Shown in pieces: positions 10,015-63,378 of a stretch of DNA of 64,000 nucleotides (positions are counted from its first letter, which is position 1; each line of letters starts with the position of its first letter). The stretch comes from Octopus sinensis (taxonomy: Eukaryota): contig NC_043003.1 in assembly GCF_006345805.1 (NCBI RefSeq), positions 52,390,001 through 52,454,000 on the forward strand. The letters are read 5' to 3'. Below the pieces are notes generated by a model. It saw only the letters and a list, made by a program, of their open reading frames with translations. It ran no database searches and was not told where the DNA came from. The position numbers and the translations under genes were made by a program.

Positions 10015-10550
10015 CTGATTCCTTCACAGTTTCCACCTACCAAATTTCACAGTAGGCGTAGGAGTGGCTGTGTGGTAAGTAGCTTGCTTACGAACCACAT
10101 GGTTCCATATTCAGTCCCACTGCGTGGCACCTTGGGCAAGTGTCTTTTACTAAAGCCTCGGGCCGAACAAAAACTTGTGTGTGGATTTGGTAGACGGAAA
10201 CTGAAAGAAGCCCGTCGAATATATGTATATGTGTGTGTGTGTGTGTGTGTTTGTGTGTCTGTGTTTGTACCCCAACATCGCTTGACAACCGATGCTGGTG
10301 TGTTTACGTCCCCGTAAATTAGCGGTTCGGCAAAAGAGACCGATAGAATAAGTACTAAGCTTACAAAGAATACGTCCTGGGGTCGATTTTCTCGACTAAA
10401 AAGGCAGGGCTCCAGCATGGCCACAGTCAAATGACTGACCACTGATTGGTGGGCGGGGTATATAATAGAAAAGACAGACCCAAAGAGCCACGTAGCGGGA
10501 CTGAATTGGAAACCACATGTTTCCGAAGCAAATCTCTTAACCACATAGCC
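9725..10550 (-). mobile_element. Old family-C SINE, split by a younger family-C copy
   Basis: 3' module at 9725-9860, internal (CA)n and middle at 9960-10050, head at 10440-10550, all reverse orientation. Confidence 0.6.
10053..10437 (+). mobile_element. Family-C SINE (bipartite, internal microsatellite)
   Basis: taggcgtaggagtggctgtgtggtaag head, ggcaccttgggcaagtgtctt CORE-like segment, internal (TG)n, 3' module ...ctccagcatggccacagtcaaatgactga. Confidence 0.85.
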
Positions 10551-13512: not shown

Positions 13513-14466
13513 TTACTCATTTCTTCTGTAGCAGTTGAACATGATTCCTAACTGTTGCCGAAAGTTAGTATCACAGTTGATGTAAATGCAAACATTAAGT
13601 GAAATTCCAGTCAGTTGGATCAAATAGCAGATGGTTTTTGCAAGGTCTAAACCAGCCAAGGCAGTGTCATCTGTTTTGTAAACAGAATCGACAATCATTT
13701 CAATACAGATTGGTAAGGTTGTTGCTAGGAACAACCAAGTGAGTTTCATGACAAGGCGTGTCATTCGGGCAGCTCGTTGAGTGATGTATGAATTGGCATT
13801 TCTTTGGCCCTCGGTGAGTGATCTACGAAAATTACTTTGCTTTTTCATAACTAACATGAAATATATGTTACCTACAAGCATGATGGTGAAGGGAATCAGG
13901 CACAAAAATGCCAAATCAATGAATACAAAAACAAAATCTTCGAAGTGTTCTATATCCGCATTTTTGGAAACACAATCATTGTTCTGTACTTCATTTGTGA
14001 AGAAGTAATGACAATCTACCAAAGCTAGGAAAATGAAGACACAGACTAGTACTGTAATTGATACTTTCGTAGTCCATAGTCGTTTAAAAGTGAAAGGTCT
14101 GTGAATAAGAAGACAACGTTGAATAGTCATAATGACAATAATCCAAGCTGAATATTGCATACTAACGTAAGTAATAAATAAATTGAACTGGCATCCGAAA
14201 CTAGAAAAGCTACGCATATTAACATTTACTACGTATTCAGTCCAGTATTTAGGAAGAACAGTACACAGTATAACCATGTCAGTTACTGCCAATACACTTC
14301 TGAAAATTATTGAAGAATTTACCCCCTCTTTGCGTTTGAACACTAAAATAGTAATAACAAGACAGTTTCCTGTAACTCCAACAAATAACAGGATCGGAGA
14401 GAAAAATCCCCACATGACTTTGGACGCAGTTTCTGATGAACTGTAATCTGCTGAACTATTATTCAT
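13513..14466 (-). CDS. Rhodopsin-like (class A) orphan GPCR, peptide-receptor-like, 317 aa, uninterrupted ORF
   Basis: Seven hydrophobic segments; TM1 GVTGN, TM2 LAVTD, TM3 Cys (GCQF) and QRC in place of DRY, ECL2 Cys (DCVS), TM5 LCLIPF, TM6 TTLP, TM7 SLNVCIY; N-glycosylation site in MNNSS; first ATG at 14466 (the track start at 14496 is TTG). Confidence 0.92.
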   Translation of the reverse strand: MNNSSADYSSSETASKVMWGFFSPILLFVGVTGNCLVITILVFKRKEGVNSSIIFRSVLAVTDMVILCTVLPKYWTEYVVNVNMRSFSSFGCQFNLFITYVSMQYSAWIIVIMTIQRCLLIHRPFTFKRLWTTKVSITVLVCVFIFLALVDCHYFFTNEVQNNDCVSKNADIEHFEDFVFVFIDLAFLCLIPFTIMLVGNIYFMLVMKKQSNFRRSLTEGQRNANSYITQRAARMTRLVMKLTWLFLATTLPICIEMIVDSVYKTDDTALAGLDLAKTICYLIQLTGISLNVCIYINCDTNFRQQLGIMFNCYRRNE

Positions 14467-14496
14467 TGTTGAGAAGTTTGGTAATCCGATAATCAA

Positions 14497-20774: not shown

Positions 20775-21135
20775 TCAAGCGTGGATGAGTGGCAAGACGT
20801 TTACTTCGTAACCACGCAGTTCTCAGTTCAGTCCCACTGCATGGCACCTTGGGCAAGTGTCTTCTACTATAACCACGGGCCGACCTAAACCTTGGTGAAC
20901 GAAAGCTTGTATATATCTATGTGCGTGTGTGCTTTTCTATTTGTGTTTCTACCCCACCACTACTGGACAACCGTTGTTGATTTGTTTACGTTCTCATAAC
21001 TTAGCAGATCAACAAAAGAGATTGACAGAATATGAAGCACGTTTAAAGAAAAATAAGTAATGGGGTCTGTTTGTTTGACTAAACTCTTCAAAGCTGTGCT
21101 CCAGCATGGCCGAAGTCCAGTTACAGAAACAAGAG
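20775..21135 (+). mobile_element. Family-C SINE, degenerate
   Basis: ggcaccttgggcaagtgtcttctactata...gctccagcatggccg. Confidence 0.7.
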
Positions 21136-21578: not shown

Positions 21579-22189
21579 TATATAAGAATTTTTTGTGTAA
21601 TGAGATAAAAAACCAAGGCTGTGTAGATATTAGAATATCTATAGATAGAAGATCTTACGGCTGTTTCCAGGATATTTATTAATTATATCCCTTCATCAGA
21701 GACGGTGTGAGAGGATGGTTAAGTAATAATTAATTTGGATAGGATACAAGAGAGTGAGGTGGAGGAAAGAAAATAGATGTGAGATATGTAGGGATATTGA
21801 ATTTGTAGATCCATTTTTTTAGGCAGAATGGTATATATGTAAGATTCCAATACCTTATTTTAAAAATCCAATAGTATTTAAAATTGTTCATTCCAACAAT
21901 TTTAATACTGTTGGATTTTTCTCATAAGGTATTGGAGTCTTACTTTCTGCCTAAAAAATGGATCTAAAAATTCAATATCCCTACATATCTCATCAATTTT
22001 CTTTCCTCCACCTCACTCTCTATTTTGCATCCTATCCAAATTAATTATTACTTAACCATCCTCTCACACCGTCTCTGATGAAGGGATATAATTAATAAAT
22101 ATCCTGGAAACAGCTGTAAGACTTTCTATCTGTAAATGTTCTAATATCTACACAGCCTTGGTTTTTTATCTCATTACGCAAAAAATTCT

Positions 22190-22195
<6 letters not shown>
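21579..22195. mobile_element. Inverted pair of Penelope-like pseudo-LTR ends (~305-bp arms, 6-nt loop)
   Basis: 21579-21888 is the reverse complement of 21895-22195; arms contain a decayed ORF end (HKVLESYF...) and a hammerhead-like motif. Confidence 0.75.
22071..22122 (+). ncRNA. Minimal type-I hammerhead ribozyme-like motif (mirror copy on minus strand at 21652-21703)
   Basis: GTCT-CTGATGA-A-GGGATAT(aattaataa)ATATCCT-G-GAAA-CAGCTG-TA-AGAC: helix I gtct/agac, helix II, palindromic helix III; one extra G before GAAA. Confidence 0.65.
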
Positions 22196-28963: not shown

Positions 28964-29629
28964 TATGAGTCAAGTTTTTAATATTTTACACCTCTTGTTT
29001 AAAAAAAAAATCTTTCCCCTTTCTCTCCTCCTCGCTGCACCTTGTTATTCTTTTTTTTTCCATTAAATATTGGCACAAATCTAACATATCTGTCTATCTA
29101 GCGTATCAGGTAACCATGTTAGGTCATTTGATAGGAAAATTCCCTGGTTACTAGTTTCGAGGGATAAGAGTTGATATGAGGTTTATAAGAGTTGATATGA
29201 GTTTTATTGAAAACTCTTGCAAGATCTTGTGTCCTTGGGAAGTCTTTCAATGAAAATTTTGGCATTCTATCGATTCCTGGCTTTTCCAGTTGTGTTACTT
29301 CTTAATACACCGTTCCCACTCTTATTTCCTGTTCTTATTATCTAATACGGTTTACATAAATGAATCTATAATAAGCAGTAAATATATTTTCACATAGTGA
29401 AATGTTTGGCAAACGTACTATATGGCATTTGTTTTGATTTATGTTTGTCAGGTCTACATCCGATTAATGTACTCTGTCTAATATTAGTAACTCTATGTTG
29501 ATTGCTGTGACACAAATGACAGCTAGACGTCAACTTGATAAACAAATCAACAGGCTTGTGAAATATGTCACAAAATGATCTACTGAGAACAAGTTACTTA
29601 TATCTATAATACCGTTTTAATAATCCCTT

Positions 29630-29832
29630 CTACTAAAAGCCTGAAATTATGCGAGAGGGGAGCAGTCGATTACATTGACCCTAGTGTTTCACTGGTACTT
29701 AATTTACAGGCCCCGAAAGGATGAAAAGCAAAATCGACATCGGTGGGATATAAACTCAGAAAGGAGCGATGGGCGAGATACCGCTAAGTATTTCGTCCGG
29801 CGTGTTAACGATTCTGCCAGTTCGCCGCCTTA
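29630..29832 (-). mobile_element. SINE family D (D2), degenerate
   Basis: Ends ...attctgccagttcgccgcctt (reverse complement of the D head). Confidence 0.7.
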
Positions 29833-29844
29833 ATATATATATAT

Positions 29845-30079
29845 ATTTTTTTTTTACTACCCACAAGGGGCTAAACACAGAGGGGACAAACAAGGACAGA
29901 CATAGTTATTAAGTCGATTACATCGACCCCAGTGCGTAACTGGTCCTTAATTTATCGACCTCGAAAGGATGAAGGGCAAAGTCGACCTCGGCGGAATTTG
30001 AACTCAGAATGTAACGGCAAGCGAAATACGGCTACGCATTTCGCCCGGCGTGCTAACGTTTCTGCCAGCTCGCCGCCTA
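29845..30079 (-). mobile_element. SINE family D (D1)
   Basis: tttactacccacaaggggctaaacacagagggg...gctcgccgcct. Confidence 0.85.
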
Positions 30080-30218
30080 GATGGAAACTAAGTATCAAGT
30101 GTTGCAACTAAATACCATATCATCGTGATCGACGAGGAGTTCTTTTCCCAGACTTGCAGTGCTTTCTTCTTGAGGTGGGTCATTTTTTTTAAATATCATA
30201 ATAGCAGAAACAGAAACA

Positions 30219-30450
30219 AAAGGCGGTGAACTGGTAGAAACGTTAGCACGCCGGGCGAAATGCTTAGCGTTATCTCGTTTGCTGCTACGCTCTGAGTTCA
30301 AATTCTGCCGAGGTCGACTTTGCCTTTCATCCTTTCGGGGTCGATAAAATAAGTACCAGTTACGCACTGGGGTCGATATAATCTATTTGTCTGTCCTTGT
30401 TTGTCCCCTCTATGTTTAACCCCTTGTGGGAAGTAAAGAAATAAGAAACA
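30219..30450 (+). mobile_element. SINE family D (D1)
   Basis: aaggcggtgaactggtagaaacgttagc...gagttcaaattc...ccccttgtgggaagtaaagaaata. Confidence 0.85.
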
Positions 30451-31650: not shown

Positions 31651-32530
31651 TAGAAGTGAAATATACGTGCAGCCTTATACTATGAAACGATCGCGGGTTT
31701 CGTTCCTCTTTTATAATACGCGCATCCCGGTCTAATCCATAATAATCTTACACCACAACCAGGCTAAAACCCTGGAGATAGTATTTTACGTTTTACTTGT
31801 TTTAGTCACTGAACTGTGGCCATGCTGAAAGATGCAGTCAAACCAATCGACGCCATTACATTTTTTAAAAGTCTGGTACTTACTGTCTCTGTCTCTTTTG
31901 CCAAACTATGTTATGTGGATATATACAAGCCAACACCAGTTGTCAAAAGGAGCTGAAAGACAAATATAACACAAACATAAAGACACACACGAGCGTACCA
32001 CGCAATGGAACCGAACCGAAAACCATATTGTTGGGAAACAAAGCTTTTCAAACTACACAGTTATGTCTGTATACTTTATTCATTCACAGGCATAGACAGG
32101 ACGAGCAGACGACACTATTATTTGGAATATTGCATATAAACACAGCTGTCTTGTTGAAGAAATATACGGAAGTTATTTCGAGAGAGGAATTAAAAAAAAT
32201 GTTTTTAAAAGGAAACTACGTGAATTGCATCTTAAAAAGAATGAAGGTTTAACTACAGCTGCAGGGTGGAGCAACAATGCACAGATTGCAACTAAGTTTG
32301 AAATAGCATAGAACACTTGGAGATAAAAAATGCGCAGATGTTTTTTTTAAGCACCGTCACACAAATGGGCCAGTCGTGACGAAAGTTGTAAATGACCAAA
32401 TTTTGTAAATAAAATTAGCGAATAATAAATCATAAAGAAGGATGTCGTGAGCAAGAAGTTCGCTTTGCAGCCACGTGGTTTCGGGTTCAATCCAACCGCA
32501 TGGCACCTTGGGCTACTGTCTTCTACTATA

Positions 32531-33675
32531 TATACTTATTGCAGCAGTTCTTCAGTTTTTCTAAGCCCTGTGAAAAGAACTTCGAAAGTTGGGTATCCAA
32601 CCAGGCTTCTGTTGCAGCAATCACTTCCGAATCGGAGTGAAATTTCGTTCCCTTGGGATGTTTCTTCAGTTGTGGAAATAGGTGATATTCGGAGGGACTA
32701 AGTCTGGAGAGTATGGTGGGTGGTCGACCAATTCGAAGCTTAAAGTCGCGTATTTTACGTAGAGTTTCATGTGCATTTTCCTCCAAAAATATGACACCAC
32801 GGTTCAGCTTTCCATGGCGTTTCTGCTTCAAAGTTTCACGCAGTTCTTTCAACAGAGACATGTAGTATTCTGCTTTGATGGTATACTTTGACAGGTATTT
32901 TGTCCCAAAACTCTGAAGCCAGAATCTTTCCAGCTCACTTCTGGATTCAAAAATTTTTGAGACGCAGTGAACCTCTGTGACACAGCTCCATCGATTGAGG
33001 CTTACTCTGGGGATCATAACAAGGGATTCAAGTCGCATCCATGGTGACTGAGCGAGCTATGAAATCAGCCTCTCCCGCGGCAAACCGTTCTAAAATCGCC
33101 TTTTATGTCGTCATTCTGATGCGCTTCTGATCTGCGATCAGATATTTCGGCACCCATTTTGCGGAAAGCTTTCTCGTGTCCAGAATGTCGAGTATGATGT
33201 AGCCAGCTCTTTGGCGAGAAATCCTCAGAGTCTTAGCTATGCCTTTAGCTAAAATCCGGTGGACCTCGAGAATCATGACGTGCACAGCGTCGGCTTTGTC
33301 CTCTGTGGTTGCGAAAGTTGGCCGTCTTGATCGAGGTTCACCAGTGACTTCGAAATGACCAGTCCGAAACCTTAACACCCAGATATTCATTATGGAGTAA
33401 GATGAGCAGCCATCTTTCAAGATTTCCTTCATCTCACCATGGGATTCCGCCGCTCCTTTGCCTTGCTTCAATTTTATCGCTCGCGATTCAATTTTACAAA
33501 AATCAACTGCAGGAGCTGCCATCATGCATTAAATCTGCAAAAAGGAGAAAGATATATTGTATACCATCATGATTTTTGAATATTTTCTAAGTAGTTGTCC
33601 TGCCTCACCCTTGTAAAGGTAACATCTCTATCTTTTCGCGATATTCTTAAAGCCATGAATTTTTCAGCACTTTCG
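32531..33675 (-). mobile_element. Mariner (irritans-like) relic, one end lost
   Basis: Minus-strand KLSAKWVPKYL, YYMSLLKELRETLKQKRHGKL, LSPSEYHLFPQLKKH...FHSDSEVIAA; TIR-like tacgaaagtgctgaaaaattcatggc at 33677; distal end replaced by a SINE head at 32437-32530. Confidence 0.85.
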
Positions 33676-37264: not shown

Positions 37265-37850
37265 TGAAGATCCCCTTCGGTTACGAATGACCATAGGATT
37301 GCACCTAGAAAGTTCCGGCCCCGAGGTACAAGTCTGAGCAAAGCTGTATGTGGAAGAGCAAAAGTGACCCATACATACCTATTTCTTTACTACCCACAAG
37401 GGGCTAAACACAGAGGGGACAAACAAGGACAGACGCGCGGATTAAGTCGATTATATCGACCCCAGTGCGTAACTGGTACTTATTTAATCGACCCCGAAAG
37501 GATGAAAGGCAAAGTCGACCTCGGCGGAATTTGAACTCAGAACGTAGCGGCAGACGAAATACGGCTACGCATTTCGCCCGGCGTGCTAACGTTTCTGCCA
37601 GCTCGCCGCCTTTTATGACCCATACATACCAGTCTTCCCTCTCCAGCCACTGATGTCCACGGGAAAGGTAACAGCCGATGCAGCTTGGCACCAGTGACGT
37701 CGCAACCCATTACAACAGCTGAGTGCACAGGAGCAATGTGAAATAAAGCTCTTGCTCTAAAACACAACCCACAGCCCAGTCCGAGAATCGAACTCGCATT
37801 CTCATGATTGCAGGTCTGACGCTCTAACCACTGAGCTGTGTACCTTCACT
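37265..37850 (-). mobile_element. SINE family G, split by a nested D1 SINE
   Basis: Homologous to 418-750; the two halves rejoin at the duplicated tgacccatacatacc. Confidence 0.8.
37380..37615 (-). mobile_element. Young D1 SINE with 15-bp TSD
   Basis: TSD tgacccatacatacc at 37365-37379 and 37616-37630. Confidence 0.92.
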
Positions 37851-38602: not shown

Positions 38603-40355
38603 TGCAACTTTGACCCTCTATAAATCCTAAATTTTATTTTAGAATTTATGGGAGTAAATGTCTTTGAAGACTCATTGTTGAATGCTCGAAATGAGTAGAC
38701 AGCAGACAATTGATGAAGGGTCCTTTCTTTGTGTTTACTCGTCCTGTTTTCCAATTTTTCCTCGTTGTCTACATATTTCATGTTAGTTGCACCATTGATG
38801 GCGTCCTGTACCCACATGCATGTGTGTGTGTATGTATATATATATATATATATATATAATTTTTTTTTATCACATACATACATACATGCATACATACATA
38901 CATACATACATACACGCCAGGTTTCTTTCAGTTTCCGTCTACGAAATCCACTCACAAAGTTTTGGTCTGCCCAAATTGCCCTAATTTCCACGCAGTGGGA
39001 CTGAACCTTGAACAACTTGGTTGGGAAGCTACGCTTGCACCTGTCCCCTTTTATTTCAAAGATCCCTAACACATAATATAGTGCTCCCAAGGACATGACC
39101 GTGACACTCTGGACGATCGCCAGAGTTGTCGGTACACCGAGCCAGACTTGGGTGGCCGAGTCAGCTGATAATGCATGTACTGAGCCTGCACGCGGCACGC
39201 AAAGCAAAAGGTAACTCTAACCAGCTTATTCATCGAATTCCAATAATAGGATGATAAAATAATGAAATTAAATGTCAATGAGATGCAGTTATAGAAAATT
39301 TTATATCATTTTATATGAAACGAGAGTATTTATGAACTTTCTTTATATAACCAATACTCCACCTTTTTATTGTTTCAAAAGTCTACGCTGTTTAATGTTC
39401 TGTACTAAATATTTTCCCATGTGGCTAGAATTTACTCAAAGAATACATGTTTGCTGCATCTCTGACAAGTGTTCATGTTGCTTATCTCTCCATTCATAAA
39501 CGTATAAGTGGAAAGACTTATAAACTGGTGTTAGGAACATATATTACTTGAGCTGTTCCATTTTGTGTAAAGTACTTCAGATAAACATTTAAGAATTCAA
39601 ATGACATCCACACTGTTCATGCATATTGAATTCCTTAAACAACAATTTTCCTACTTCAAAATCCTAAGTCTCCTTTATCATTGTTTTCGTTTCTCTTTAA
39701 AAAGGTGATATGTATTCCAATCTGCCACAATACAGCATGTTTGAACTCTCTGTTGTTTCGGGCTATCTGCGTTATCTACGTCTGGCAGTAAATCTATATC
39801 TGATCCTTTTGAATAAGAAACTGAAACCACCCGTCTGGGCATATCTCTAAGGATTCCAACACAACCGAGTCCATGACCCCACAGGATCTCACATGTAGTT
39901 TACCAACAGCAATACGGGCAAATAACATTTGGAAAAATTCACTCACTACTAACTGGGAAATTTTTATTTATCGCTAGAGAAAAGTAAGAGATAGCTTTGT
40001 AAATAGCCTTGTTTGTAAGTATTTCTGAGTATGCCTTTTAAATAAATTTGGTGTCAGAGATGCAACAAGCACGTATTCTTTGAGTAAATTCTAACCACAT
40101 GCAGGCAGAATATGTTTAATGTAAAATGTTACACAACGCAGCAAGCGCTCGGGAACAGGATGTTCGGGTAGTGCGCTTGCACCAGCTAAAAGATTTTTTG
40201 GGGTGCAAAAATCAAAATTTGCAACCACTAATTACCTATCCAAGTCTTAGGAAAAGTGTCTAAAAATTGATCCGTAAAAAGTTATATTTGTTCTCCAAAC
40301 AAGAACAAAGAACTAAAATAAATAAAAAGAAACCTCCCAAAAATCCCTAAAAAGA

Positions 40356-40390
<35 letters not shown>

Positions 40391-40396
40391 TATACA

Positions 40397-40435
<39 letters not shown>

Positions 40436-40782
40436 CAACAACAACAGCCATGGTCACTCCTCAATACTAACACAATCGATGATCTATTAAACTCTACAAT
40501 GAAGAGCTCTTCACTTTCCAGCTATCCAAGTTTCTCATTTCCTCTGAATACAATTGACTCCATCATCTTTACCTTTGCCATCATGTTCTACTACTATGAC
40601 TCTTAGCACGCCTAAACAACAACAACAACAACAACACAAGACCAACATCCACAGTCACTCTTCAATACTAGTACAATTGATGATGACCTATTAAACAACG
40701 CAGTTCTTAGATCTTCTCCGCAGCCAGGTCACTCAAATTCCTCTCAGAATAACACAAAAGATCCATAATCACCATTGCTACA

Positions 40783-40792
<10 letters not shown>

Positions 40793-40859
<67 letters not shown>

Positions 40860-40864
40860 ACTAC
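40793..40864. repeat. (CTA)n trinucleotide tract
   Basis: Direct reading. Confidence 0.95.
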
Positions 40865-41396
40865 TCCAATTAGTGAAGAATCACTTCTTTCTCTCACCCT
40901 CCCCACCACTGTTCGTCTCAATCTGAATGTATACCTCATAATTCCATAATAAATCTACCAACTGTAAATAAAGTAAAATTATTAACACGCGAAACCCCAA
41001 AATATGCTGCTATTCTCAACGCGAGAGACTATGCATACACAGTGACTGCAACTTCACTCATTTACCTGGGACAAGACGCACAATTCGTACAAGCACTACC
41101 AGCCAACGCCGAAGCACATATCTTACAACACCACCGCCACCATTAAATGCTAAATCATACTTAATAGCTTCTACACATGTAATCCGGAATCCTAAAATCT
41201 GCTGCTATTCCAAATTCGATAAATTATGTCTGAAATGTGACTCTCTCTTCGCTCATCTTCCAGGGACTCGACGCACTATTAAAAGCATGACTCCAAGGCA
41301 CCACCAAATCCATAGTAGAAACATTCCTTACAGTGGCAGTGTTGATCCAGACTTCCGCCGAAACCCAGAAGTCACCCAGATATCCATCGGATACAA

Positions 41397-41691
41397 TTTT
41401 GTTTGTTCCTTCTCGAGCCATGTCTGGCTCATAAGGGCCGGTTTCCCGGTTTCCTTGGCGTATAGGTTCCCCACCTGGACGGGACGCCGGTCCGTCGCAG
41501 GTGAGCTGCAAGATGCAGGAGGAAAGTTGTGGCGAAAGAGTCAGCAGAGATTCGCCATTACCTTCTGTCGGAGCCGTGAGAAGCTTAGGTGTTTTGCTCA
41601 TAAATACACACATCGCCCGGTCTGAGATTCGAACCCGCGATCCCTTGACCGCGAGTCCGCTACTCTAACCACTAGACCATGTGCCTCCACT
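41397..41691 (-). mobile_element. SINE family A with 11-bp TSD
   Basis: Head gtggaggcacatggtctagtggttagag...gggttcgaatctc; TSD atcggatacaa at 41386-41396 and 41692-41702. Confidence 0.9.
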
Positions 41692-42047
41692 ATCGGATAC
41701 AACAGTAAAATCAACACCAGCAAACCATATAACTACAACCATATTCAACAGTGCAACCATAACACCTCCAGACAACAACTCCTCCCAAAACAAGAAAATT
41801 ATTTTTTAGCCATGATAAATCTGGCAAAAGAAATAAAGAATAAAACCTTTCCGTACTCACACAATACCAACCACTGCTATTACCCCAGGGCACTACCACG
41901 CACTTGCTATTATTAACTAACAAAGTCAACTCAATAATAATAATGAATGTATAATGTCTTTCACACTTCACAAATCGAACAAAAGTATCATAACTTAGAA
42001 ACTTTAGACACCGAGAAAAGACTATATGTTTAGTACTGAGAGAAGCT

Positions 42048-42633
42048 TGTAGTGATACTATGACGGTGCGCGCTCGCGCACCGTCCATTTGTATTTCGCG
42101 CGTGTTGGTGCCTTTACCAAGGCAGAGAAAGGAAGGGCCCTCTCGCGCATGCGCGAACCACCGGAAGCACGACCCTGGCCAAGGCAGGGGGATCGTAGAA
42201 CGTTTGACCGCTAGCAGCAGCAGCGGCGACTTGGGACAGCAGCGACCTAAGGAGCAGGACGTTAATATTTTCTCTCCGTTCGAACTGATTCTAGCAGTCC
42301 TTACCAAAAGGCCTTTAACCAAAATTGTTGCAGACCAACATCGTCTCCATTGTTCGACGCCATCTTGAACCCGTTCTGTTTTTGCGGCTGAATATTGTAA
42401 ATATTACAATCGATTAACTTTCAGCCTTGCGCGCCCAGAACCAAGGACATCAGATAACACACTTATTGTTATTGTTATCAAGAAAGAGAATAAAGTAGTA
42501 TATATATATTTTACGTCTGCGTCTTGTTGTTTCTGACTGGTAGAGAATCTGGATTATTAAAGCAACGGCTAGTGATTGCTTTCTTGTACCCCGAAAGTAC
42601 AAGACAAGATACTCACATCATAGGTTCGTTACA
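42048..42633 (+). repeat. 5' LTR
   Basis: tgtagtgatact...gttcgttaca; AATAAA at 42489-42494; CpG-rich 5' part. Confidence 0.93.
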
Positions 42634-42634
42634 C

Positions 42635-42655
42635 TGGTGACCTCCCGACGTGATT
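42635..42655 (+). other. Primer binding site, tRNA-Trp-type
   Basis: TGGTGACCTCCCGACGTGATT vs TGGTGACCCCGACGTGATT (complement of the eukaryotic tRNA-Trp 3' end) with a 2-nt insertion, 1 nt after the LTR. Confidence 0.8.
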
Positions 42656-44133
42656 CTGGTCTAAAACCAGAGATCACTTAACAACAAAGAAATCCAGTTT
42701 TCTGCGAAGTCGGAACACGATTTAACTCTACGCATCATCTTTCGACGATTTGTTTCCGGCCACTACAAACAGTTGTAGAAGGAGCCTCTTTCTTATTCTA
42801 CAGCCATGATGACGAACGCCATCAATTCATCGATGCTTTTTCTCTGCCTTCGTCATCACCATCGTCGTCTGTCTTACTTCACGTCGTCGCTATCTTCGTC
42901 ACCATCATCACTAAGAACGATGTTGTCTCAAGTCCACTACAGTCGCCACCACCACCGTCGACCTCCACAAGATGTACATAGCAACTCGCGGAAGTTTGGT
43001 CCACTTGCCGTTTGTGCATTAGCACACCAAGAATTCACAGCCCAGCACTATCTACGAGATTTCTTCTGTTCCAGTTAACCTGTTCCAGTTAACACGATAT
43101 GTGTTCAATCGGCATCTGCATTTGTGATCTCAACATTCTGTTACAGAACGAACTGCTATTGTACATCAGGCTATTACAGACTGGTAAATTAACTCTTGTC
43201 TGGGATAGCCATGAGAGACATTTTTCTATGCGCTGTTTTTATATTTTGCTCGCATTCACCTTGTATGTATTTCTGTCGCACACACGTACACACACATAAA
43301 TGCTCTCTCTCACATACATACGTCACACATGCTTTTCTCGCTTGTTTTTTTTCCATGCTAAATTTGCCTTTTGTGGACACCCCTCATTTCTATAGACCCT
43401 AGGTCGGTCACGTATACATAGAGAGGGTTGTTTGTCCATTATAACGCGCCAGCATGCCATACCTTTGTTCCTGTACGAACGAGGCATATAATCGCTCAAC
43501 CACTGGCATATTCTTGCTGTTTTTCGGTCTGGCAAGCACTATTGCATTTCATGCGTTTTTTGCTTCGCACGTGTACTTGCCTTGTTTTTGCAACACGTTT
43601 GCGTTGGCTTAGTTCTTTTCCCGACTCATAGGACGTCGGATGTTCACATGCGCTGCGCCATGTTTAGGCGTAATTATTTTTCCCTGTTAGACCACTGTTG
43701 GTCACGTAATTAACAGAAAATTATCTGTGTCGCGCATCACACCCGCATGTTTGCACTTTTGCCTTTTGTGTTACTAGCGAGCTTCTGTCAATTCCATTTC
43801 CTCTCCTGCAGCAATTGATTTAACTGCTATTTTGCAGGATCAACCACCTTTAGAGAAGTTGGATTTAATTTCGCCTAGGTTCATTAACTGTGAGTTTTGC
43901 TTTTCCCTCCGCTCCTTTCAGCGGAAGGCTCTATACTTTGTGACGTATACACTTTCATGCATGCACTCTTGATTTTTGCTCATTGAGTATTTTTTTTCTC
44001 TTTTTCCTTTAGTAAATTTCTTGTGTATGTTATAAATTTTGCCATTATATTATTGTGTGCTATTTGGTTATCTGGTGTCCACCTTGAGTTTTGCAGTCAC
44101 TACAATAAGTTTCCTTTCGTGCGTACGCACTGC

Positions 44134-44140
44134 AGGGGAG
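44134..44140 (+). other. Short polypurine tract
   Basis: AGGGGAG ending 3 nt before the 3' LTR TG. Confidence 0.7.
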
Positions 44141-44143
44141 CCT

Positions 44144-44729
44144 TGTAGTGATACTATGACGGTGCGCGCTCGCGCACCGTCCATTTGTATTTCGCGCGTG
44201 TTGGTGCCTTTACCAAGGCAGAGAAAGGAAGGGCCCTCTCGCGCATGCGCGAACCACCGGAAGCACGACCCTGGCCAAGGCAGGGGGATCGTAGAACGTT
44301 TGACCGCTAGCAGCAGCAGCGGCGACTTGGGACAGCAGCGACCTAAGGAGCAGGACGTTAATATTTTCTCTCCGTTCGAACTGATTCTAGCAGTCCTTAC
44401 CAAAAGGTCTTTAACCAAAATTGTTGCAGACCAACATCGTCTCCATTGTTCGAAGCCATCTTGAACCCGTTCTGTTTTTGCGGCTGAATATTGTAAATAT
44501 TACAATCGATTAACTTTCAGCCTTGCGCGCCCAGAACCAAGGACATCAGATAACACACTTATTGTTATTGTTACCAAGAAAGAGAATAAAGTAGTATATA
44601 TATATTTTACGTCTGCGTCTTGTTGTTTCTGACTGGTAGAGAATCTGGATTATTAAAGCAACGGCTAGTGATTGCTTTCTTGTACCCCGAAAGTACAAGA
44701 CAAGATACTCACATCATAAGTTCGTAACA
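44144..44729 (+). repeat. 3' LTR
   Basis: tgtagtgatact...gttcgtaaca. Confidence 0.93.
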
Positions 44730-45330
44730 AGCTCATCTAATCCCAGACATATTGGATGCGGAAGTGCATATGTTAGGTTATGTACTACGCATAACTGACC
44801 GCAGAATACAGAAACAGGGAGTAGCGCTCTTTATCCAGAAACAAATGTTCTCCTCTTCCACTTCCAATATAGTGTGTGATACACTAATAATGCATGTCAT
44901 CGATTTCAGTATGATCATAGGCATTACCTACCGACTTCCTGACGCGCTTAAGCACGGAGATCACTTCAGTGACGCTCTGTGACTCATAAGTCAAACTCTA
45001 AGTGGGGTCAGCCCACAGGCCAATGTACTTTTACAGGAGACTTTAATTTTCCTAGTCTCAGCTGGCCTGAGGTCTATATCCAACCTGGAATTAAACAACT
45101 GAACAGGAAAGATATGAATGCTTTTCTCGATACCACTAAATACTTCCTCATGCAACAAATCATTACCAACCCGACTAGGGGAAATAACATACTCAACCTA
45201 GTCTTTACCATCAATACAGACTTCATTCACAATGTTCAGATTATTCCAACTGCTATTTCGTTCTATAACGTAATACAATTATCTGTATATTGTTCGAAGA
45301 GGGCAACACACACACACACACGCACGCACG

Positions 45331-45391
<61 letters not shown>

Positions 45392-45899
45392 ACACACACA
45401 CACAAATAACATCAAGCATGACACATCCTCCGTCCATGAACTTGAATTTTTGGAAGACCGAGAAGGAAATCGAAATTGAAATCCTCGAAACAAACTGGTC
45501 TCAGTATATTGGCAACTTCAATGTTAACGAGAGAATGAAGTTTCTGTACGAAGAATTAATTAAGATCTGTTGAAAGCATACCCCATATAAACACGCCTAT
45601 TCCTCCAAGAACTTGATTCAAAAAGATAGACTTATACTAATGCGTAACAGAATCAAATAAAAAAAACTAAAAAAAAAAAAAAAAAAAAAAACTCTCTCAA
45701 GAGATGAGGTTAAGAAAAAGTAAAAAGAATAAAGAACATCGAACTGGTCTAAAACTATTTCATGAAAAAGAAATTTCGCTCAGGGAACATCGAGCAGTGG
45801 AGAATATAAAGTCTAATCATAAGCCCTTTCCTACTTTACTAAACAAAAAATCATCTAGTCACAACCAGATTGGCTCTGTAATGGACCAAATTGGATCTC

Positions 45900-46325
45900 T
45901 TTTTCTCTTTTCTCTTTTCTCTTTTACTTGTTTCAGTCATTTGACTGCGGCCATGCTGGAGCACCGCCTTTAGTCGAGCAAATCGACCCCGGGACTTATT
46001 CTTTTTTTTTATAAGCCCAGTACTTATTCTATCGGTCTCTTTTGCCGAACCGCTAAGTGACGGGGACGTAAACACACCAGCATCGGTTGTCAAGCGATGC
46101 TAGGGGGACAAACACAGACACACAAACACACATACATACATATATATATATACATATATATGACAGGCTTCTTTCAGTTTCCGTCTACCAAATCCACTCA
46201 CAAGGCATTGGTCGGCCCGGGGCTATAGCAGAAGACACTTGCCCAAGATGCCACGCAGTGGGACTGAACCCGGAACCATGTGATTGGTTAGCAAGCTACT
46301 TACCACACAGCCACTCCTGCGCCTA
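45900..46325 (-). mobile_element. Family-C SINE inserted in the CR1-like LINE
   Basis: Near-consensus full-length copy with internal (TA)/(TACA) tract and ctttt-repeat tail. Confidence 0.88.
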
Positions 46326-47347
46326 TATATACTAATGATTAATAGTATATATCATATACTAATGATTAATCACAAATACGCATCCTCTTGAGTCAACAGT
46401 ATAACTGCATTTTGCCAACATATAGTTAACAAAATAATATATAAGCCAAACAAATTTTTTGATCATTAGAACTCAGATGCAGAGACACATCTAAAAATTA
46501 ATGATGTTATGGAAGATGATATACTTACAGCTATTAATGATGTAAATTCAAGCTTAACATCTGGATCAGATGGTCTCCCAGCCATACTGTTAAAAACGAG
46601 AAAAAAAAACCTTGTGAAACTATTAAAGATACTAATTCAAAAGTCGCTAGATACCGGCATATTCCCAAAACTACTGAAAGAGCCAATAGGAAGTTGCCAG
46701 GATGAAGCAAAAAATTACAGACCTGTTTTAGTCCCATCTCACACACCTAAAATTATCAAAAGTATTGTCCAAAAAAGAATATTTACATACCTTGAGGAAA
46801 ACAATCTCTTAGATGACGCACAACATGGTTTTTAACAGGACGAAGTTGCCTGTCACAACTATTACAGTACCATAGCACTGTTCTCAATAATCTCATGTAT
46901 ACACTGACTGTATATACCTTGTATTCACTGACTGTATACACCTTGATTTTGCTAAGGCCTTTGGCAAGATTGTCAGTGGAATCAGCTATCATAAGTCAAG
47001 AAATCACAGGAAAAACTCGAAGAATGACTCTTTGACTTCTTACACAGTAGGAGTCAATATGTTACTGCAAATGGCTTTCTCTCTGCTAAGTCACCTGTAA
47101 TAAGTGGTATACTCCAGGGAACGGTTCTAGGACCATTATTATTTATCCTCACCGTATCAGGTATAGCGTTACAAGTTACGGTAGCGATGCACAAATATCG
47201 ATCGTTACCCAAGCTCCCGAAGACATCATCACACTCCAAAATGAATTAAACCTCATTTGTCAATGAGCAAATAAAAAAACAATATGAAATTTAATATATT
47301 ATATATCGGTGGAATTGTTATAACGGCTGATTGGTTCCACTTTTATA

Positions 47348-47579
47348 TATTTCTTTACTACCCACAAGGGGCTAAACACAAAGGGGACAAACAAGGACAG
47401 ACAAACGGATTAAGTCGATTACATCGACCCCAGTTCGTAACTGGTACTTAATTTATCGACCCCGAAAGGATGAAAGGTAAAGTCGACCTCAGCGGAATTT
47501 GAACTCAGAACGTAACGGCAGACGAAATACGGCTACGCATTTCGCCCGGCGTGCTAACGTTTCTGCCAGCTCGCCGCCT
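47348..47579 (-). mobile_element. Young D1 SINE with 17-bp TSD
   Basis: TSD ttggttccacttttata at 47331-47347 and 47580-47596. Confidence 0.92.
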
Positions 47580-49269
47580 TTGGTTCCACTTTTATAATGT
47601 GGTGTTTTATCTTATTTATATAGTTTCTATTTGGAATAGATAATACATATATTTTATTTCTTGAGTAAGAATCTATATTGATAAACCTGTCACTTATAAC
47701 TTAATTATATGCATTATCACTATACATAAACCTCAACTCAAGCTACATAAACGCCGTGGTGAAAAGTATATATGTCAAGATGCTTGAAAGGACATGTTGA
47801 ATGTGCATGTATGTTGAAGATAAGTTCGTGTTCTTCTTCACCGCTATAAAAACAGTTTCATAATTGCCGAAATTAATTTCATTAACAGGTTGGAAAGAAG
47901 TGAAGAAAGAGAAAATGTATACTACATTGGTTTATTTATATACATTTAATATTTACAGTACATTTAGAAGTAAGTAAATTTGTCGTAGAGAGTTACGACA
48001 TAAATTTATTACTACCTAATTCCTTCATACTATCAGAGTTTACACATCAATTCAAATAAGTCTTGTTGGATTTAAGTAATAGACATGGCATAAAAATAGC
48101 CAATATCTCAAAGGAGTGAGTGTCGTGAAGTTTATTAACAACCAGCGATCACTATTGTGAGTGTCGTGGAGTTCAGTCGCAACCAACGATCAGGGTTTTT
48201 ATAACTGCCCATACCTGAACCGTATTTCGTGAAAGAATTCTCTTTGACGAAAGTTTAGAATTCAAATATGGGCAATAATTTTAACCAATGGGAAACCAAC
48301 AATTATACTTGTTCGGGAAACATGACCATTAAGTCATATTACCATCTTTTATGACTTGCTTGCTGCTCATTACAATATCAAAATTCCAGATTCTTCATTA
48401 CGGAGGGAATATACAAAAATCACAATATTTGACACCAGTTAACTCAATGATTCAAAACGCTAATGACATACGGGTCTTAGGAGTAATTATGTCAAGACAT
48501 ACGGGTCTTTCATATGCCACATCACCAAACTGACCTCTAAATGCAGACATCTCACAGGATGGATCTTACGAACCTTCGTAACAAGAGAATCGGACACTTT
48601 GGAAAACCTTCGTTCTGAGCAGATTAGATTACTGCTCACAGCTTTGGTCTCTTAACTCATCCTGTCTCATAGGAGAAATTGAAGGGTTCAAAGAACGTTC
48701 ACCAGTAAAATAATTTGGTTAAAAGCTTTAATTGTCGGGGACATTTGAAAGCGCTACGTCTCTACTCTCTTTAATGTCGAAGAGAGAGATATACTATCTC
48801 CTGGAGGTGCATGTTTCAAAGTTCGGCAATAGAGAGAATTTTAATGCACAGACTGATAAATACTGTCAGCTTCCAAATGTATCAGCTTCGAGATCACGAG
48901 CAAAAACATTTTATTGTATCAGTCAAATATTTAGAGGTCCTTAACTTTTGGCTAAATCAGGATCTTGCCTTCACAAATCTGTTTCTGTACTACCATCTAA
49001 TGAAAGTAGTGTAAACAAGCCGAATGTGATTAATGATATTGACAAGCAATCTATTGTTCCATCATCCCCCGACCTGCAGCCGGTAAATTCTTGTTATGTA
49101 ATTCATGTAAATCATAATGTGGGGGTTGATGTGTCTAATATAAGAAATTACAATAACAACTCAAACATTATAAACACAGCTTCTGATAGCAACTGTTGTA
49201 TCTACATAGACTTTAACAGTATTACACAGATGAGTCCAATATCGCCGTTGAAGCTTATGATAATAATAA

Positions 49270-50093: not shown

Positions 50094-51105
50094 CGAGTTT
50101 TATTTCATCAATTTTAAAGATTGTTTTATATACTCTGAGTTTGTTTTTAATATTTTCTTTTATATATATTACATTTTTATCATATTGCTGTATTATTGTA
50201 ACAATTCTGCATTTCTCAATGTATACTTTATTATACTTTATTATGAAGTATACCTTATTATACTTTATTATACTTATAAACTAATAATACTACTTCGCAT
50301 TTTCATTTTACTATTATTAACGCGTGCATTTCTACTGATATTTGTAGTGACGCTATCCAACAGCGCGCGCGCGCGCAACGCCACTTCAGCACGCGTGTGC
50401 GGGGGTTTGGAGCCTTCTGGTGAGGCAGAAGGGAAGCGCCCTCTCGCGCATGCGCGAAGACCGGAAGAAGGGAATGATGATGTGGCATTTAGCTGACAGG
50501 AGGCGTGGGAAGGTAAAACCTTAACCAGAAAGCGTCTAGAGACACGTAGCAGTCGGCAGAAGGCTGCCCACACCAAATTGTACCAGACCATATTTTCTTC
50601 GCTCTCTAAGGACGCCATATTTGACCAATTCTGTTTGCTGTTGAACTTGTAAGATTCTTACAAGCGTTAAATTTCAGCCTTGCCACATCCAGAACCAAGT
50701 GGAACCAAATATACCACCTTATTTCTTACTGTTATAAGAAAAATAAAGAGTATATATTTTTACTGTTGCGTTTGTGTTCTTTTGACTGGTAGAATCTGGA
50801 AATCAAAAGAACGGAAATTGTGAATGCACCCGAGTTGCACCCCCAAAAGTGCAACGAGTTTTATTTCATCAATTTTAAAGATTGTTTTATATACTCTGAG
50901 TTTGTTTTTAAATATTTTTTTTTATATATATTACATTTTTATCATATTGCTGTATTATTGTAACAATTCTGCATTTCTCAATGTATACTTTATTATACTT
51001 TATTATGAAGTATACCTTATTATACTTTATTATACTTATAAACTAATAATACTACTTCGCATTTTCATTTTACTATTATTAACGCGTGCATTTCTACTGA
51101 TATTT
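50094..51105 (+). repeat. ~250-bp direct duplication (50094-50343 and 50855-51105) flanking an LTR fragment
   Basis: Copies near-identical (cgagttttatttcatc...ctactgatattt) apart from a small T-tract difference. Confidence 0.9.
50343..50855 (+). mobile_element. 3'-truncated LTR of a sister family to the 42048 element
   Basis: Starts tgtagtga; shares ccctctcgcgcatgcgcgaa..ccggaag, tttcagccttgc..ccagaaccaag, AATAAA and gactggtag(ag)aatctgga; lacks the terminal CA end. Confidence 0.85.
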
Positions 51106-51121
51106 ATATTTTTTATTTATA

Positions 51122-51286
51122 TAGGTGCAGGAGTGGCTGTGTGGTAAGTAGCTTGCTTACCAACCACATGGTTCCGGGTTTATTCCCACTGCGTGGTACC
51201 TTGGGCAAGTGTCTTCTACTAGAGCCTCGGGTCGACCAAAGCCTTGTGAGTGGATTTGGTAGACGGAAACTGAAAGAAGCCCGTCG

Positions 51287-51317
<31 letters not shown>

Positions 51318-51560
51318 TTGTATGTATGTATGCGTGTGTATATGTTTATGTTTGTGTGTTTGTGTTTGTCCCCTCAACATTGCTTGACAACCGATGCTGG
51401 TGTGTTTACGTCCCCGTAACTTAGCGGTCCGGCAAAAGAGGCCGATAGAGTAAGTACTAGGCTTACAAAGAATAAGTCCTGGGGTCGATTTGCTCGACCC
51501 CAGGACTTTTGCTAAAGGTGGTGCTCCAGCATGGCCGTAGCCGAATGACTAAAGCAAGTG
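51122..51560 (+). mobile_element. Family-C SINE
   Basis: taggtgcaggagtggctgtgtgg...internal (TA)n(TG)n...gctccagcatggccg. Confidence 0.88.
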
Positions 51561-60259: not shown

Positions 60260-60812
60260 TTGGGTTGTCCGGAAAGTTCGTGCCGATTTATAGTAGCTTA
60301 CCTTTCGACTTATTTTAGAACATGTTTGAGTCCATAAAATAGGATTTGACTACACCTCCATTTAGAGCACGGTTTAAGCTATCTTTTCGTGGAAGAAGAT
60401 TTATGTTCCTATAACCTGTGTTAATTCTGTAACCCTTTAAAACGGAAGATGAGAAAGTTCATTTTCGGCACTTGATACTTTGGGAACCAGACAAAAATTG
60501 CTGCAGCTCGGCTGGGATGTGTTACCCCACCTTCTATATTCACCAGATATTGCTCCTTCGGATTTCCAGTTATCCAGGTCTCTGCAGAATAGTCTTAAAG
60601 GTAAAAATTTCTATTCCTTGGATGACGTAAAAAGATACCTTGATAAATTCTTTGCCATGAAACCACTTCAATTCTGGGAAGAGGGTATTTTCAAGTTAAA
60701 GGAAAGATGGAGACGCATTGTGTAACAAAATGGTTCATATTTAGTTGATTAAAAATGTAATGGCAAGTATTTATTAACCTTTTTCTTTCCTTTAAAATTC
60801 CGGACAACCCAA
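60260..60812 (+). mobile_element. Mariner deletion derivative of the same family as 25357, retaining the C-terminal part
   Basis: 5' TIR/UTR nearly identical to 25357-25570; jumps to LGTRQKLLQLGWDVLPHLLYSPDIAPSDF...ERWRRIV; right TIR partly deleted. Confidence 0.9.
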
Positions 60813-61297: not shown

Positions 61298-61440
61298 CAG
61301 GTGTAGGAGTGGCTGTGTGGTAAGTAGCTTGCTTACGGACCACATGGTTCCGGGTTCAGTCCCGCTGCGTGACACCTTGGGCAAGTGTCTTCTATAGCCT
61401 CGGGCCGACCAAAGCCTTGTGAGTGGATTTGGTAGACGTC

Positions 61441-61504
<64 letters not shown>

Positions 61505-61700
61505 GTGTGTCTGTGTTTGTCCCCCCCCACATCGCCTGACAACCGATGCTGGTGTGTTTACGTCCCTGTAACTTAGTGGTTCGGCAAAAGAGACTGATAG
61601 AATAAGTACTAGGCTTACAAAGATTAAGTCCTGGGGTCGATTTGCTCGACTAAAGGCGGTGCTCCAGCATGGTCGCAGTCATATGATTGAAACAAGAGTA
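61298..61700 (+). mobile_element. Family-C SINE
   Basis: Head, internal (TA)n(TG)n and 3' module all present. Confidence 0.88.
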
Positions 61701-62777: not shown

Positions 62778-63378
62778 TTATTTTCTACTCTAGGCACAAG
62801 GCCCGAAATTTGGTGGGAGGGGCCAGTCGATTAGATCGAGCCTAGGACGCAACTGGTACTTAATTTATTGGCCCTGAAATAATGGAAGGCAAAATTGACC
62901 TCGGCGGAATTTGAACTCACAACGTAAAGACAGAAGAAAAACCTATTTCTATTTCTTTACAACCCACAAGGGGCTAAACACAGAGAGGACAAACAAGGAC
63001 AAACGGATTAAGTCGATTATATCGAGCCCAGTGCGTAACTGGTACTTATTCAATCGACCCCGAAATGATGAAAGGCAAAGTCGACCCCGGAGAATTTGAA
63101 CTCAGAACGTAGCCGCAGACGAAATACCGCTAAGCATTTCGCCTGGCGTACTAACGTTTCTTATTTCTTTACTGTCCACAAGGAGTTACACACAGAGAGG
63201 ACAAACAAAAGGATTAAGTCGATTATATCGACCCCAGTGCGTAACTGGTACTTATTTAATCGACCCCGAAAGGATGAAAGGCAAAGTTACCTCGGCGGAA
63301 TTTGAACTCAACGTAACGGCAGACGAAATACCGCTAAGCATTTCGCTTGGTGTGCTAACGATTCTACCAGCTCGCCGC
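62778..63378 (-). mobile_element. Three stacked family-D SINEs (D2, D1, D1)
   Basis: Three successive aactggtactt..atcgaccccgaaa..gaaaggcaaagt modules; the first two lose their heads where the next tail begins. Confidence 0.85.

What the first reader, a model, noticed from the sequence alone, without database searches (positions are those of the whole stretch)
42048..44729. Young, complete, non-coding LTR retroelement primed by tRNA-Trp: candidate undescribed non-autonomous family
Seen: 586-bp LTRs with 5 differences, AGCT TSD, tRNA-Trp-type PBS with a 2-nt bulge, short PPT, and a 1.5-kb interior with no usable ORF. Only faint gag/protease echoes remain (RKFGPLA.C near 42990; LVWDSHERHF near 43190), which is weak inference. 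A heavily decayed interior between near-identical LTRs implies recent mobilisation in trans. It is larger than typical TRIMs and smaller than typical LARDs. Established: 4-bp TSDs and tRNA-Trp priming occur in Ty3/Gypsy elements; coleoid genomes are described as SINE/LINE-rich, so a recently active non-autonomous LTR family is notable.
Basis: partly seen in the sequence, partly recalled or inferred. Interest (0 to 1): 0.72.

Follow-up and report, generated by a model that had tools for sequence, protein, structure and literature searches.

The report
Young non-coding LTR retroelement in octopus
This is a real, recently inserted 2.7-kb LTR retrotransposon copy in an Octopus vulgaris/sinensis chromosome that has all the signals needed to be copied but no genes of its own, so it is an ordinary though uncatalogued-looking kind of genomic parasite.

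Summary
The structural observation is confirmed base for base. There are two 586-bp LTRs (42048-42633 and 44144-44729) with 5 substitutions and no indels, TG...CA ends and an AGCT target-site duplication. A primer-binding site matches the tRNA-Trp 3' end 18/18 apart from a 2-nt insertion, and a short purine tract precedes the 3' LTR. Removing the element and one AGCT restores the reading frame of an old LINE endonuclease, so it is a true insertion. The 1510-bp interior has no ORF above 99 codons, which is no better than shuffled sequence. The host is Octopus vulgaris/sinensis. A tRNA-Trp PBS with a 4-bp TSD are two published hallmarks of the CsRn1 clade of Ty3/Gypsy, which is common in cephalopods, and that clade is the likeliest helper. 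An older relative of the LTR (~70% identical) lies at 50343-50854, so the LTR lineage is not unique. I could not test whether this is a multi-copy non-autonomous family, because no cephalopod genome or repeat library was searchable. Verdict: a new member of a known kind, of modest interest.

The parts
42044..42047 (+). Left copy of the 4-bp target-site duplication AGCT
   Evidence: Joining the flanks with one AGCT restores a LINE endonuclease frame.
42048..42633 (+). 5' LTR, 586 bp, TG...CA
   Evidence: 5 substitutions against the 3' LTR. CpG o/e is 1.17 against 0.78 for the window.
42062..42085 (+). Perfect GC-rich palindrome GACGGTGCGCG-CT-CGCGCACCGTC in U3 (also at 44158-44181)
   Evidence: Read from the sequence; coordinates. 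Only partly conserved in the old relative.
42143..42156 (+). Palindrome TCGCGCATGCGCGA containing the NRF1/EWG/P3A2 consensus GCGCATGCGC (also at 44239-44252). Candidate promoter element.
   Evidence: The 20-mer CCCTCTCGCGCATGCGCGAA is identical in both LTRs and in the ~70%-identical old LTR at 50439-50458. Consensus from PMC10810270. Binding is inferred, not shown.
42358..42366 (+). CGCCATCTT, a YY1-type core (AGCCATCTT in the 3' LTR at 44454-44462; CGCCATATT in the old LTR)
   Evidence: The same core is in the YY1 gel-shift probe of PMC1904287. Function is inferred.
42489..42494 (+). AATAAA poly(A) signal followed by the GT/T-rich block 42515-42535. It puts the R/U5 border near 42505-42515 (3' LTR copy at 44585-44590).
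   Evidence: The block is conserved in the old LTR (50742-50747). The U3/R/U5 borders are inferred.
42582..42604 (+). U5 hairpin (8-bp stem, 7-nt loop)
   Evidence: -8.4 kcal/mol, z = -5.5. The old LTR keeps the hairpin (-9.8 kcal/mol, z = -5.8) through two compensatory pair changes (C-G to G-C, U-A to C-G).
42635..42655 (+). Primer-binding site complementary to the 3' end of tRNA-Trp, with a 2-nt TC insertion
   Evidence: The duplex with the tRNA 3' 18 nt is -30.2 kcal/mol against -36.3 for the uninterrupted site.
42515..42760 (+). Structured U5-PBS-leader domain. U5 (42526-42553) pairs with the leader (about 42693-42720) around the PBS. A hairpin at 42650-42677 follows the PBS.
   Evidence: MFE -69.4 kcal/mol, z = -3.15, 1 of 200 shuffles as stable; post-PBS hairpin -12.9 kcal/mol, z = -4.6. 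A role in packaging or priming is inferred.
42634..44143 (+). Non-coding interior, 1510 bp
   Evidence: No ORF above 90 aa, no relevant Pfam family, no gag/pol homologue, and no other copy in the window or in 50 kb of O. bimaculoides. CpG o/e is 1.0.
44134..44140 (+). Short polypurine tract AGGGGAG, 3 nt upstream of the 3' LTR
44144..44729 (+). 3' LTR, 586 bp
44730..44733 (+). Right copy of the target-site duplication AGCT
50343..50854 (+). Older relative of the LTR, about 70-74% identical in the aligned blocks. It starts at the same TGTAGTG terminus and lacks the last ~31 nt.
   Evidence: nhmmer E = 1e-132.

Best explanation
It is a copy of a non-autonomous LTR retrotransposon in the Octopus vulgaris/sinensis genome, inserted recently into the endonuclease region of an old LINE. 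Proposed mechanism: RNA polymerase II starts in the CpG-rich U3, at NRF1-type and YY1-type motifs that are conserved in an older relative. The transcript ends at the AATAAA/GT-rich signal of the 3' LTR. This RNA encodes nothing and is packaged into particles made by an autonomous Ty3/Gypsy element, most likely of the CsRn1 clade. Host tRNA-Trp primes minus-strand synthesis at the PBS, which sits inside a structured U5-leader domain. The short purine tract primes the plus strand. The helper's integrase joins the TG...CA ends with a 4-bp stagger, giving the AGCT duplication. Shown: the anatomy, the insertion, the absence of coding capacity, the youth of the copy, and the existence of an older LTR relative. 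Inferred: the promoter motifs, trans-packaging, the identity of the helper, and that there is a family with several copies.
For: LTR pair, TG...CA ends, TSD, PBS and PPT are all present. The empty-site join restores ...ICLVLREA|HLIPDILDAEVHMLGY... of a LINE endonuclease, with weak Exo_endo_phos_2 (E = 0.005) and RVT_1 (E = 1e-5) hits downstream. The interior shows no coding signal: the longest open stretch is 99 codons against a shuffle mean of 121, six-frame Pfam gave nothing relevant, and phmmer against 1.84 billion proteins gave only two spurious repeat proteins. LTR divergence is 0.85%, against about 9-11% between this window and the collinear O. bimaculoides DNA. So the insertion dates to roughly a tenth or less of that species split. 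CpG is not depleted, at o/e 1.0-1.17 against 0.78 for the window. The leader is structured (z = -3.15), and the U5 hairpin is kept by two compensatory changes in the old LTR. A tRNA-Trp PBS plus a 4-bp TSD are stated hallmarks of the CsRn1 clade (PMC2582038). That clade was found in 9 of 12 cephalopods, and Gypsy made up 100% of the complete LTR elements in O. bimaculoides (PMC6238403). The host was identified.
Against: Only this one full copy could be examined. No second copy of the interior was found in the 64-kb window or in 50 kb of O. bimaculoides, and no cephalopod genome or repeat library could be searched. No autonomous partner was seen. The PBS carries a 2-nt insertion, which costs about 6 kcal/mol. 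It should tend to be corrected by copying of the tRNA at each cycle, so it may be a post-insertion mutation rather than a family trait. The PPT is only 7 purines and is not flush with the LTR. Two plus-strand frames have fewer stops than shuffles (12 and 12 against 18.6 +/- 3.9; both <= 12 in 0.2% of shuffles). That is a faint hint that part of the interior once coded.
Confidence: 0.6

Rival explanations
1. One-step deletion derivative. A full-length autonomous Gypsy RNA was packaged by its own proteins, and reverse transcriptase jumped from the leader to the 3' non-coding region. The integrated copy therefore lost gag-pol in a single event. No non-autonomous family exists.
For: Only one copy of the interior is visible. 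The cis signals at both ends are intact. This mechanism gives young LTRs and a non-coding interior just as well as the best explanation does.
Against: 1510 bp is long for a leader plus a 3' untranslated region. No partial gag or integrase ORF ends remain. The interior contains microsatellite-like and T-rich stretches (43274-43330 and 43990-44020).
Confidence: 0.22
2. Old autonomous element that decayed and lost sequence in place, with its two LTRs kept alike by gene conversion.
For: Gene conversion between LTRs is known in other genomes (general knowledge). Two of the five LTR differences cluster in the last 11 nt, which could mark the edge of a conversion tract.
Against: The interior shows no gag/pol homology at all, while the old LINE in the flanks still scores for RVT_1. 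The TSD, PBS, PPT and leader structure are intact. CpG is not depleted in the LTRs or the interior.
Confidence: 0.08
3. Not a retroelement: two solo LTRs that landed 1.5 kb apart, a segmental duplication, or an assembly artefact.
For: None specific. Pairs of repeats with a spacer are often mislabelled as LARD or TRIM (PMC5718144).
Against: The TSD is shared by the outer flanks only. The PBS and PPT abut the inner LTR edges. Excising the whole unit restores the LINE frame.
Confidence: 0.03

Closest known systems
CsRn1 clade of Ty3/Gypsy (CsRn1, PwRn1, AgCR, Kabuki)
   Same: tRNA-Trp primer-binding site and 4-bp target-site duplication, both named as shared properties of the clade (PMC2582038). 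The clade is widespread in cephalopods (PMC6238403).
   Different: This element has no Gag (so no CHCC motif) and no Pol, so it cannot be placed by phylogeny. Its PBS has a 2-nt insertion. The link is a lead to the helper, not proof of membership.
TRIM (terminal-repeat retrotransposons in miniature), including animal TRIMs of ants, cestodes and bivalves
   Same: Non-coding LTR-PBS-interior-PPT-LTR architecture, presumed to be mobilised in trans (PMC10886601; PMC3532108).
   Different: TRIMs are under 1 kb with short LTRs. This element is 2682 bp with 586-bp LTRs. It has no small-RNA-derived pol III promoter like those of Cassandra, Helenus or Ajax (Rfam scan empty over the element).
LARD (large retrotransposon derivatives of Triticeae)
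   Same: Long non-coding interior between full-size LTRs, dependent on an autonomous Gypsy partner (named in PMC5718144; details from general knowledge of Kalendar et al. 2004).
   Different: LARDs are several kb larger and were described in plants. Conservation of the interior among copies, which is their hallmark, could not be tested here.

Membership tests
LTR retrotransposon (structural definition) | Two direct long terminal repeats ending TG...CA | tested here: met
   586-bp LTRs, 99.15% identical, TGTAGTG...GTTACA. An older relative starts at the same TGTAGTG.
LTR retrotransposon (structural definition) | Target-site duplication of 4-6 bp and a restorable empty site | tested here: met
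   AGCT on both sides. The joined flanks give a continuous LINE endonuclease frame.
LTR retrotransposon (structural definition) | tRNA primer-binding site next to the 5' LTR and a polypurine tract next to the 3' LTR | tested here: met
   The PBS matches tRNA-Trp 18/18 with a 2-nt insertion, 1 nt after the LTR. The PPT AGGGGAG is short and lies 3 nt from the LTR.
Non-autonomous LTR retrotransposon family (TRIM/LARD class) | No gag/pol coding capacity | tested here: met
Non-autonomous LTR retrotransposon family (TRIM/LARD class) | Several copies with the same non-coding interior at different sites with different TSDs | not testable with these tools
   No cephalopod genome collection is available. 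The protein database, metagenome, viral and prokaryote scans gave nothing related.
Non-autonomous LTR retrotransposon family (TRIM/LARD class) | An autonomous partner sharing LTR ends, PBS or PPT | not testable with these tools
TRIM | Total length under about 1 kb with LTRs of about 100-250 bp | tested here: not met
   2682 bp with 586-bp LTRs. Size criterion from PMC10886601.
LARD | Large size (over 4 kb) with a conserved non-coding interior | tested here: not met
   The element is 2682 bp. The size criterion is from general knowledge, and conservation was not testable.
CsRn1 clade of Ty3/Gypsy | PBS complementary to tRNA-Trp | tested here: met
   with the caveat of the 2-nt insertion. Criterion from PMC2582038.
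CsRn1 clade of Ty3/Gypsy | 4-bp target-site duplication | tested here: met
   AGCT. Criterion from PMC2582038.
CsRn1 clade of Ty3/Gypsy | Gag with the CHCC motif, and RT/RNase H/IN grouping with CsRn1 | tested here: not met
   No gag or pol is present. The element can at most be a dependant of the clade, not a member by phylogeny.

The most novel reading that the evidence does not exclude
A recently active, multi-copy non-autonomous LTR family in Octopus vulgaris/sinensis of intermediate size (between TRIM and LARD). It would be driven by a CpG-island-like NRF1/YY1-type LTR promoter and would parasitise CsRn1-clade Gypsy elements. It would keep a bulged tRNA-Trp PBS as a family trait and be absent from current repeat libraries.
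Probability: 0.3. Interest if true: 0.4.

Novelty: new member of a known kind. Interest (0 to 1): 0.3.

Why it matters
If a family of such copies exists, LTR-element machinery has been active in Octopus vulgaris/sinensis recently enough to mobilise passengers. Octopus repeats are dominated by SINEs (~40%) and LINEs (~30%) (PMC8967140), and LTR elements make up under 1% of mollusc genomes (PMC6238403). The family would then supply polymorphic insertion markers. It would also be a compact natural substrate for studying cis requirements (PBS, leader structure, LTR promoter) of CsRn1-type elements in a cephalopod. As a single copy it is routine repeat annotation.

Tried and rejected
1. Gag/protease remnants. 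Six-frame Pfam at E <= 10 gave only irrelevant weak hits: DUF7813, DUF4667 and SPOC. phmmer of the 90-aa ORF against 1.84 billion proteins gave two tandem-repeat proteins. Their scores come from summed repeats, and the one DNA locus I fetched (L017) shares nothing with the element. Rejected.

2. Other copies through LTR-encoded ORFs in the 5.8-billion protein collection. Both LTR strands were tried and gave no hits.

3. DNA scans.
- Metagenome: the LTR 20-mer gave 14 loci. Twelve are high-GC bacterial chance hits, and two AT-rich contigs share only the palindrome.
- Viral contigs: three patterns, 0 hits.
- Prokaryote genomes: one Rhizobium chance hit.

4. Orthologous site. The O. bimaculoides locus obtained through the neighbouring GPCR (L015) is collinear with window 2-22588 only, so it stops 20 kb short of the element. 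Exact-product look-ups of window ORFs and of the O. vulgaris and O. sinensis GPCR proteins were not on record.

5. Host tRNA-Trp. No tRNA gene was found in the window or in L015.

6. Rfam over 40000-47000. There were only sub-threshold miRNA-like hits on microsatellites outside the element.

7. Captured SINE or other window repeat in the interior. None was found.

Full report
**Observation**

The repeat search and a direct alignment show two 586-bp direct repeats at 42048-42633 and 44144-44729.
- They differ by five substitutions and no indel: 42312 C/T, 42358 C/A, 42478 T/C, 42623 G/A and 42630 T/A.
- They begin TGTAGTG and end GTTACA/GTAACA, and they are flanked by AGCT at 42044-42047 and 44730-44733.
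- One base after the 5' LTR lies TGGTGACCTCCCGACGTGATT (42635-42655). The published complement of the tRNA-Trp 3' end is tggtgaccccgacgtgat (PMC4635179). The complement of a human tRNA-Trp gene continues ...GATTTGAAC (10.1101/400127).
- The site therefore matches 18 of 18 positions, plus one further T, if a TC dinucleotide is looped out. The pattern occurs once in the window against 0.02 expected.
- A 7-nt purine run, AGGGGAG (44134-44140), lies 3 nt before the 3' LTR.

**It is a true insertion**

I joined the flanks with one AGCT removed. This gives an uninterrupted reading frame across the junction...LRNFRHREKTICLVLREA|HLIPDILDAEVHMLGYVLRITDRRIQKQGVALFIQKQ....
- After a frameshift the frame continues into ...FTGDFNFPSLSW....
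- The joined peptide gives a weak Exo_endo_phos_2 match (E = 0.005), and pieces downstream give RVT_1 (E = 1.2e-5), both below Pfam's cut-offs.
- The element therefore landed in the endonuclease part of an old, decayed LINE.

This excludes two independent solo LTRs or a segmental duplication.

**The interior is non-coding**

The 1510-bp interior (42634-44143) has no ATG/GTG/TTG ORF above 90 aa.
- Its longest open stretch is 99 codons, below the mean of 121 for dinucleotide shuffles.
- Six-frame translation against Pfam at E <= 10 gave nothing relevant.
Both are tandem-repeat proteins whose scores are summed over 4-6 repeats.
- The DNA encoding the better hit shares nothing with the element. 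The "gag/protease echoes" are therefore not supported.
- One oddity remains. Two plus-strand frames carry only 12 stops each against 18.6 +/- 3.9 in shuffles, and both frames are this low in 0.2% of shuffles. This may be a faint trace of former coding or only local T/C-rich composition.
- The interior shows no similarity to any other repeat in the window, and Rfam finds nothing in the element.

**Host and age**

A single-exon GPCR ORF at 13513-14496 (minus strand) is 100% identical to annotated proteins of Octopus vulgaris and O. sinensis, and 89% identical to O. bimaculoides.
- Collinear non-repeat blocks between the window and the O. bimaculoides locus L015 are about 85-92% identical.
- The two LTRs differ by 0.85%. 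Both figures are sums over two lineages, so the insertion dates to roughly a tenth or less of the time since those species split.
- CpG is not depleted in the LTR (o/e 1.17) or the interior (1.0), against 0.78 for the window.
- Because the interior cannot have lost all coding signal in that short time, the RNA or cDNA that produced this copy was already non-coding. As a contrast, the far older LINE next to it still scores for RT.

**Cis-acting anatomy (inferred from sequence)**

An older relative of the LTR lies at 50343-50854. It is about 70-74% identical in the aligned blocks, with nhmmer E = 1e-132. It starts at exactly the same TGTAGTG, which supports the LTR boundary.

Blocks that survive between the two lineages mark likely functional parts:
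- CCCTCTCGCGCATGCGCGAA is a 20-mer identical in all three LTR copies. Its core is the NRF1 consensus GCGCATGCGC. NRF1 has invertebrate homologues, EWG and P3A2 (PMC10810270).
- CGCCAT(C/A)TT is the core of a YY1 probe (PMC1904287).
- AATAAAG plus TATATAT plus a GT/T-rich block (42489-42535) is a plausible poly(A) signal. It places the R/U5 border near 42510.
- TGACTGGTAGA is also conserved.
- A U5 hairpin (42582-42604) has a stem kept in the old LTR through two compensatory pair changes.

The U5-PBS-leader segment 42515-42760 folds with z = -3.15 into a long U5:leader stem that encloses the PBS. A stable hairpin follows directly after the PBS. This is the usual layout of retroelement leaders. 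The bulged PBS still pairs with the tRNA 3' end at -30.2 kcal/mol, against -36.3 for the uninterrupted site.

**Which helper**

[quoted passage not shown] PMC6238403 reports three relevant facts:
- The CsRN1 clade was found in 9 of 12 cephalopods.
- Gypsy made up 100% of 275 structurally complete LTR elements in O. bimaculoides.
- LTR elements make up under 1% of mollusc genomes.

The element meets the two cis criteria of the clade. It has no proteins, so it cannot be a member by phylogeny. A CsRn1-type element is the best guess for its helper, but this is a lead and not a test.

**What could not be done**

The tools hold no cephalopod genome collection or repeat library.
- LTR-encoded ORFs on both strands have no relatives in the protein collection.
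- The metagenome, viral and prokaryote DNA scans returned only chance matches.
- The O. bimaculoides locus reachable through the GPCR stops 20 kb short of the orthologous site. Other exact-product look-ups failed.
- Copy number, polymorphism, the autonomous partner, catalogue status and the host tRNA-Trp sequence therefore remain open.

**Explanations**

- Best (0.6): a member of a non-autonomous LTR lineage mobilised in trans, probably by a CsRn1-type Gypsy.
- Main rival (0.22): a single template jump during reverse transcription of a full-length autonomous RNA removed gag-pol. This gives the same picture without a family. Against it, 1.5 kb is long for a leader plus 3' UTR, and no ORF stubs remain.
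- In-place decay with LTR gene conversion (0.08): this fits poorly with the intact TSD, PBS and leader, the undepleted CpG, and the total absence of pol homology.
- Artefact or chance pair of repeats (0.03): excluded by the empty-site test.

**Comparison and verdict**

In architecture and presumed mechanism the element works like a TRIM or LARD. By size it is neither: TRIMs are under 1 kb (PMC10886601), and LARDs are several kb larger (general knowledge). Such size classes are conventions. Arkhipova (PMC5718144) notes that these types are not prominent in animals and are often mis-called, but here the terminal nucleotides, the TSD and the empty site are all verified. It is a new member of a known kind. 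Interest is modest (0.3) unless a multi-copy, currently active family is shown.

**Note on handling**

I also wrote it to a scratch file for local BLAST, and I deleted that file later. The element carries no gag, pol or env.

Noticed in passing
window 50094-51104: A-B-A structure. A 250-bp direct repeat (50094-50343 and 50855-51104, 99% identical) brackets the 512-bp, 3'-truncated old relative of the LTR. This is far too long for an integrase TSD. It could be a tandem duplication or a repair-mediated capture of an LTR cDNA fragment. It remains unexplained.
   Followed up: partly
window ~41990-47250 (+): Decayed LINE. The endonuclease frame is restored across the empty site, and RT pieces lie at 46470-46832 and 47028-47246. 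The LINE is interrupted by the LTR element and by SINE-like repeats (46105-46329, 47348-47581).
   Followed up: partly
window 13513-14496 (-): Intact single-exon class-A GPCR ORF, 100% identical to the O. vulgaris 'C-C chemokine receptor type 1-like' and O. sinensis 'apelin receptor isoform X2' proteins, and 89% to O. bimaculoides. This identifies the host.
   Followed up: yes
window 29599-30388, 37380-37614, 47348-47592, 62800-63365; also 10053-10400, 20776-21082, 46001-46329, 51118-51502, 61304-61654: At least two SINE-like repeat families with many copies in both orientations at 70-95% identity. This fits the SINE-rich octopus genome described in PMC8967140.
   Followed up: no
window 21579-21758 / 22016-22195: A 180-nt inverted repeat, 94% complementary, with 257 nt between the arms. 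Possibly a MITE-like element or head-to-head SINEs.
   Followed up: no
window 12128-12595 (+), 32526-33038 (-), 60453-60722 (+): ORF fragments that look like mariner/Tc1 transposase pieces on reading. They were not tested against Pfam.
   Followed up: no
window 42623 and 42630 vs 44719 and 44726: Two of the five LTR differences fall within the last 11 nt of U5, next to the PBS. They may be chance, or they may mark the end of a conversion or template-switch tract.
   Followed up: no
L002 7150-7850 and L004 830-1490 (metagenome contigs WLWD01000288.1, WLWI01000664.1): AT-rich, eukaryote-like contigs carrying AACCCTCTCGCGCATGCGCGAGAGGGTT-type palindromes about 630 bp apart. They share the NRF1-type core with the LTR but nothing else.
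   Followed up: partly
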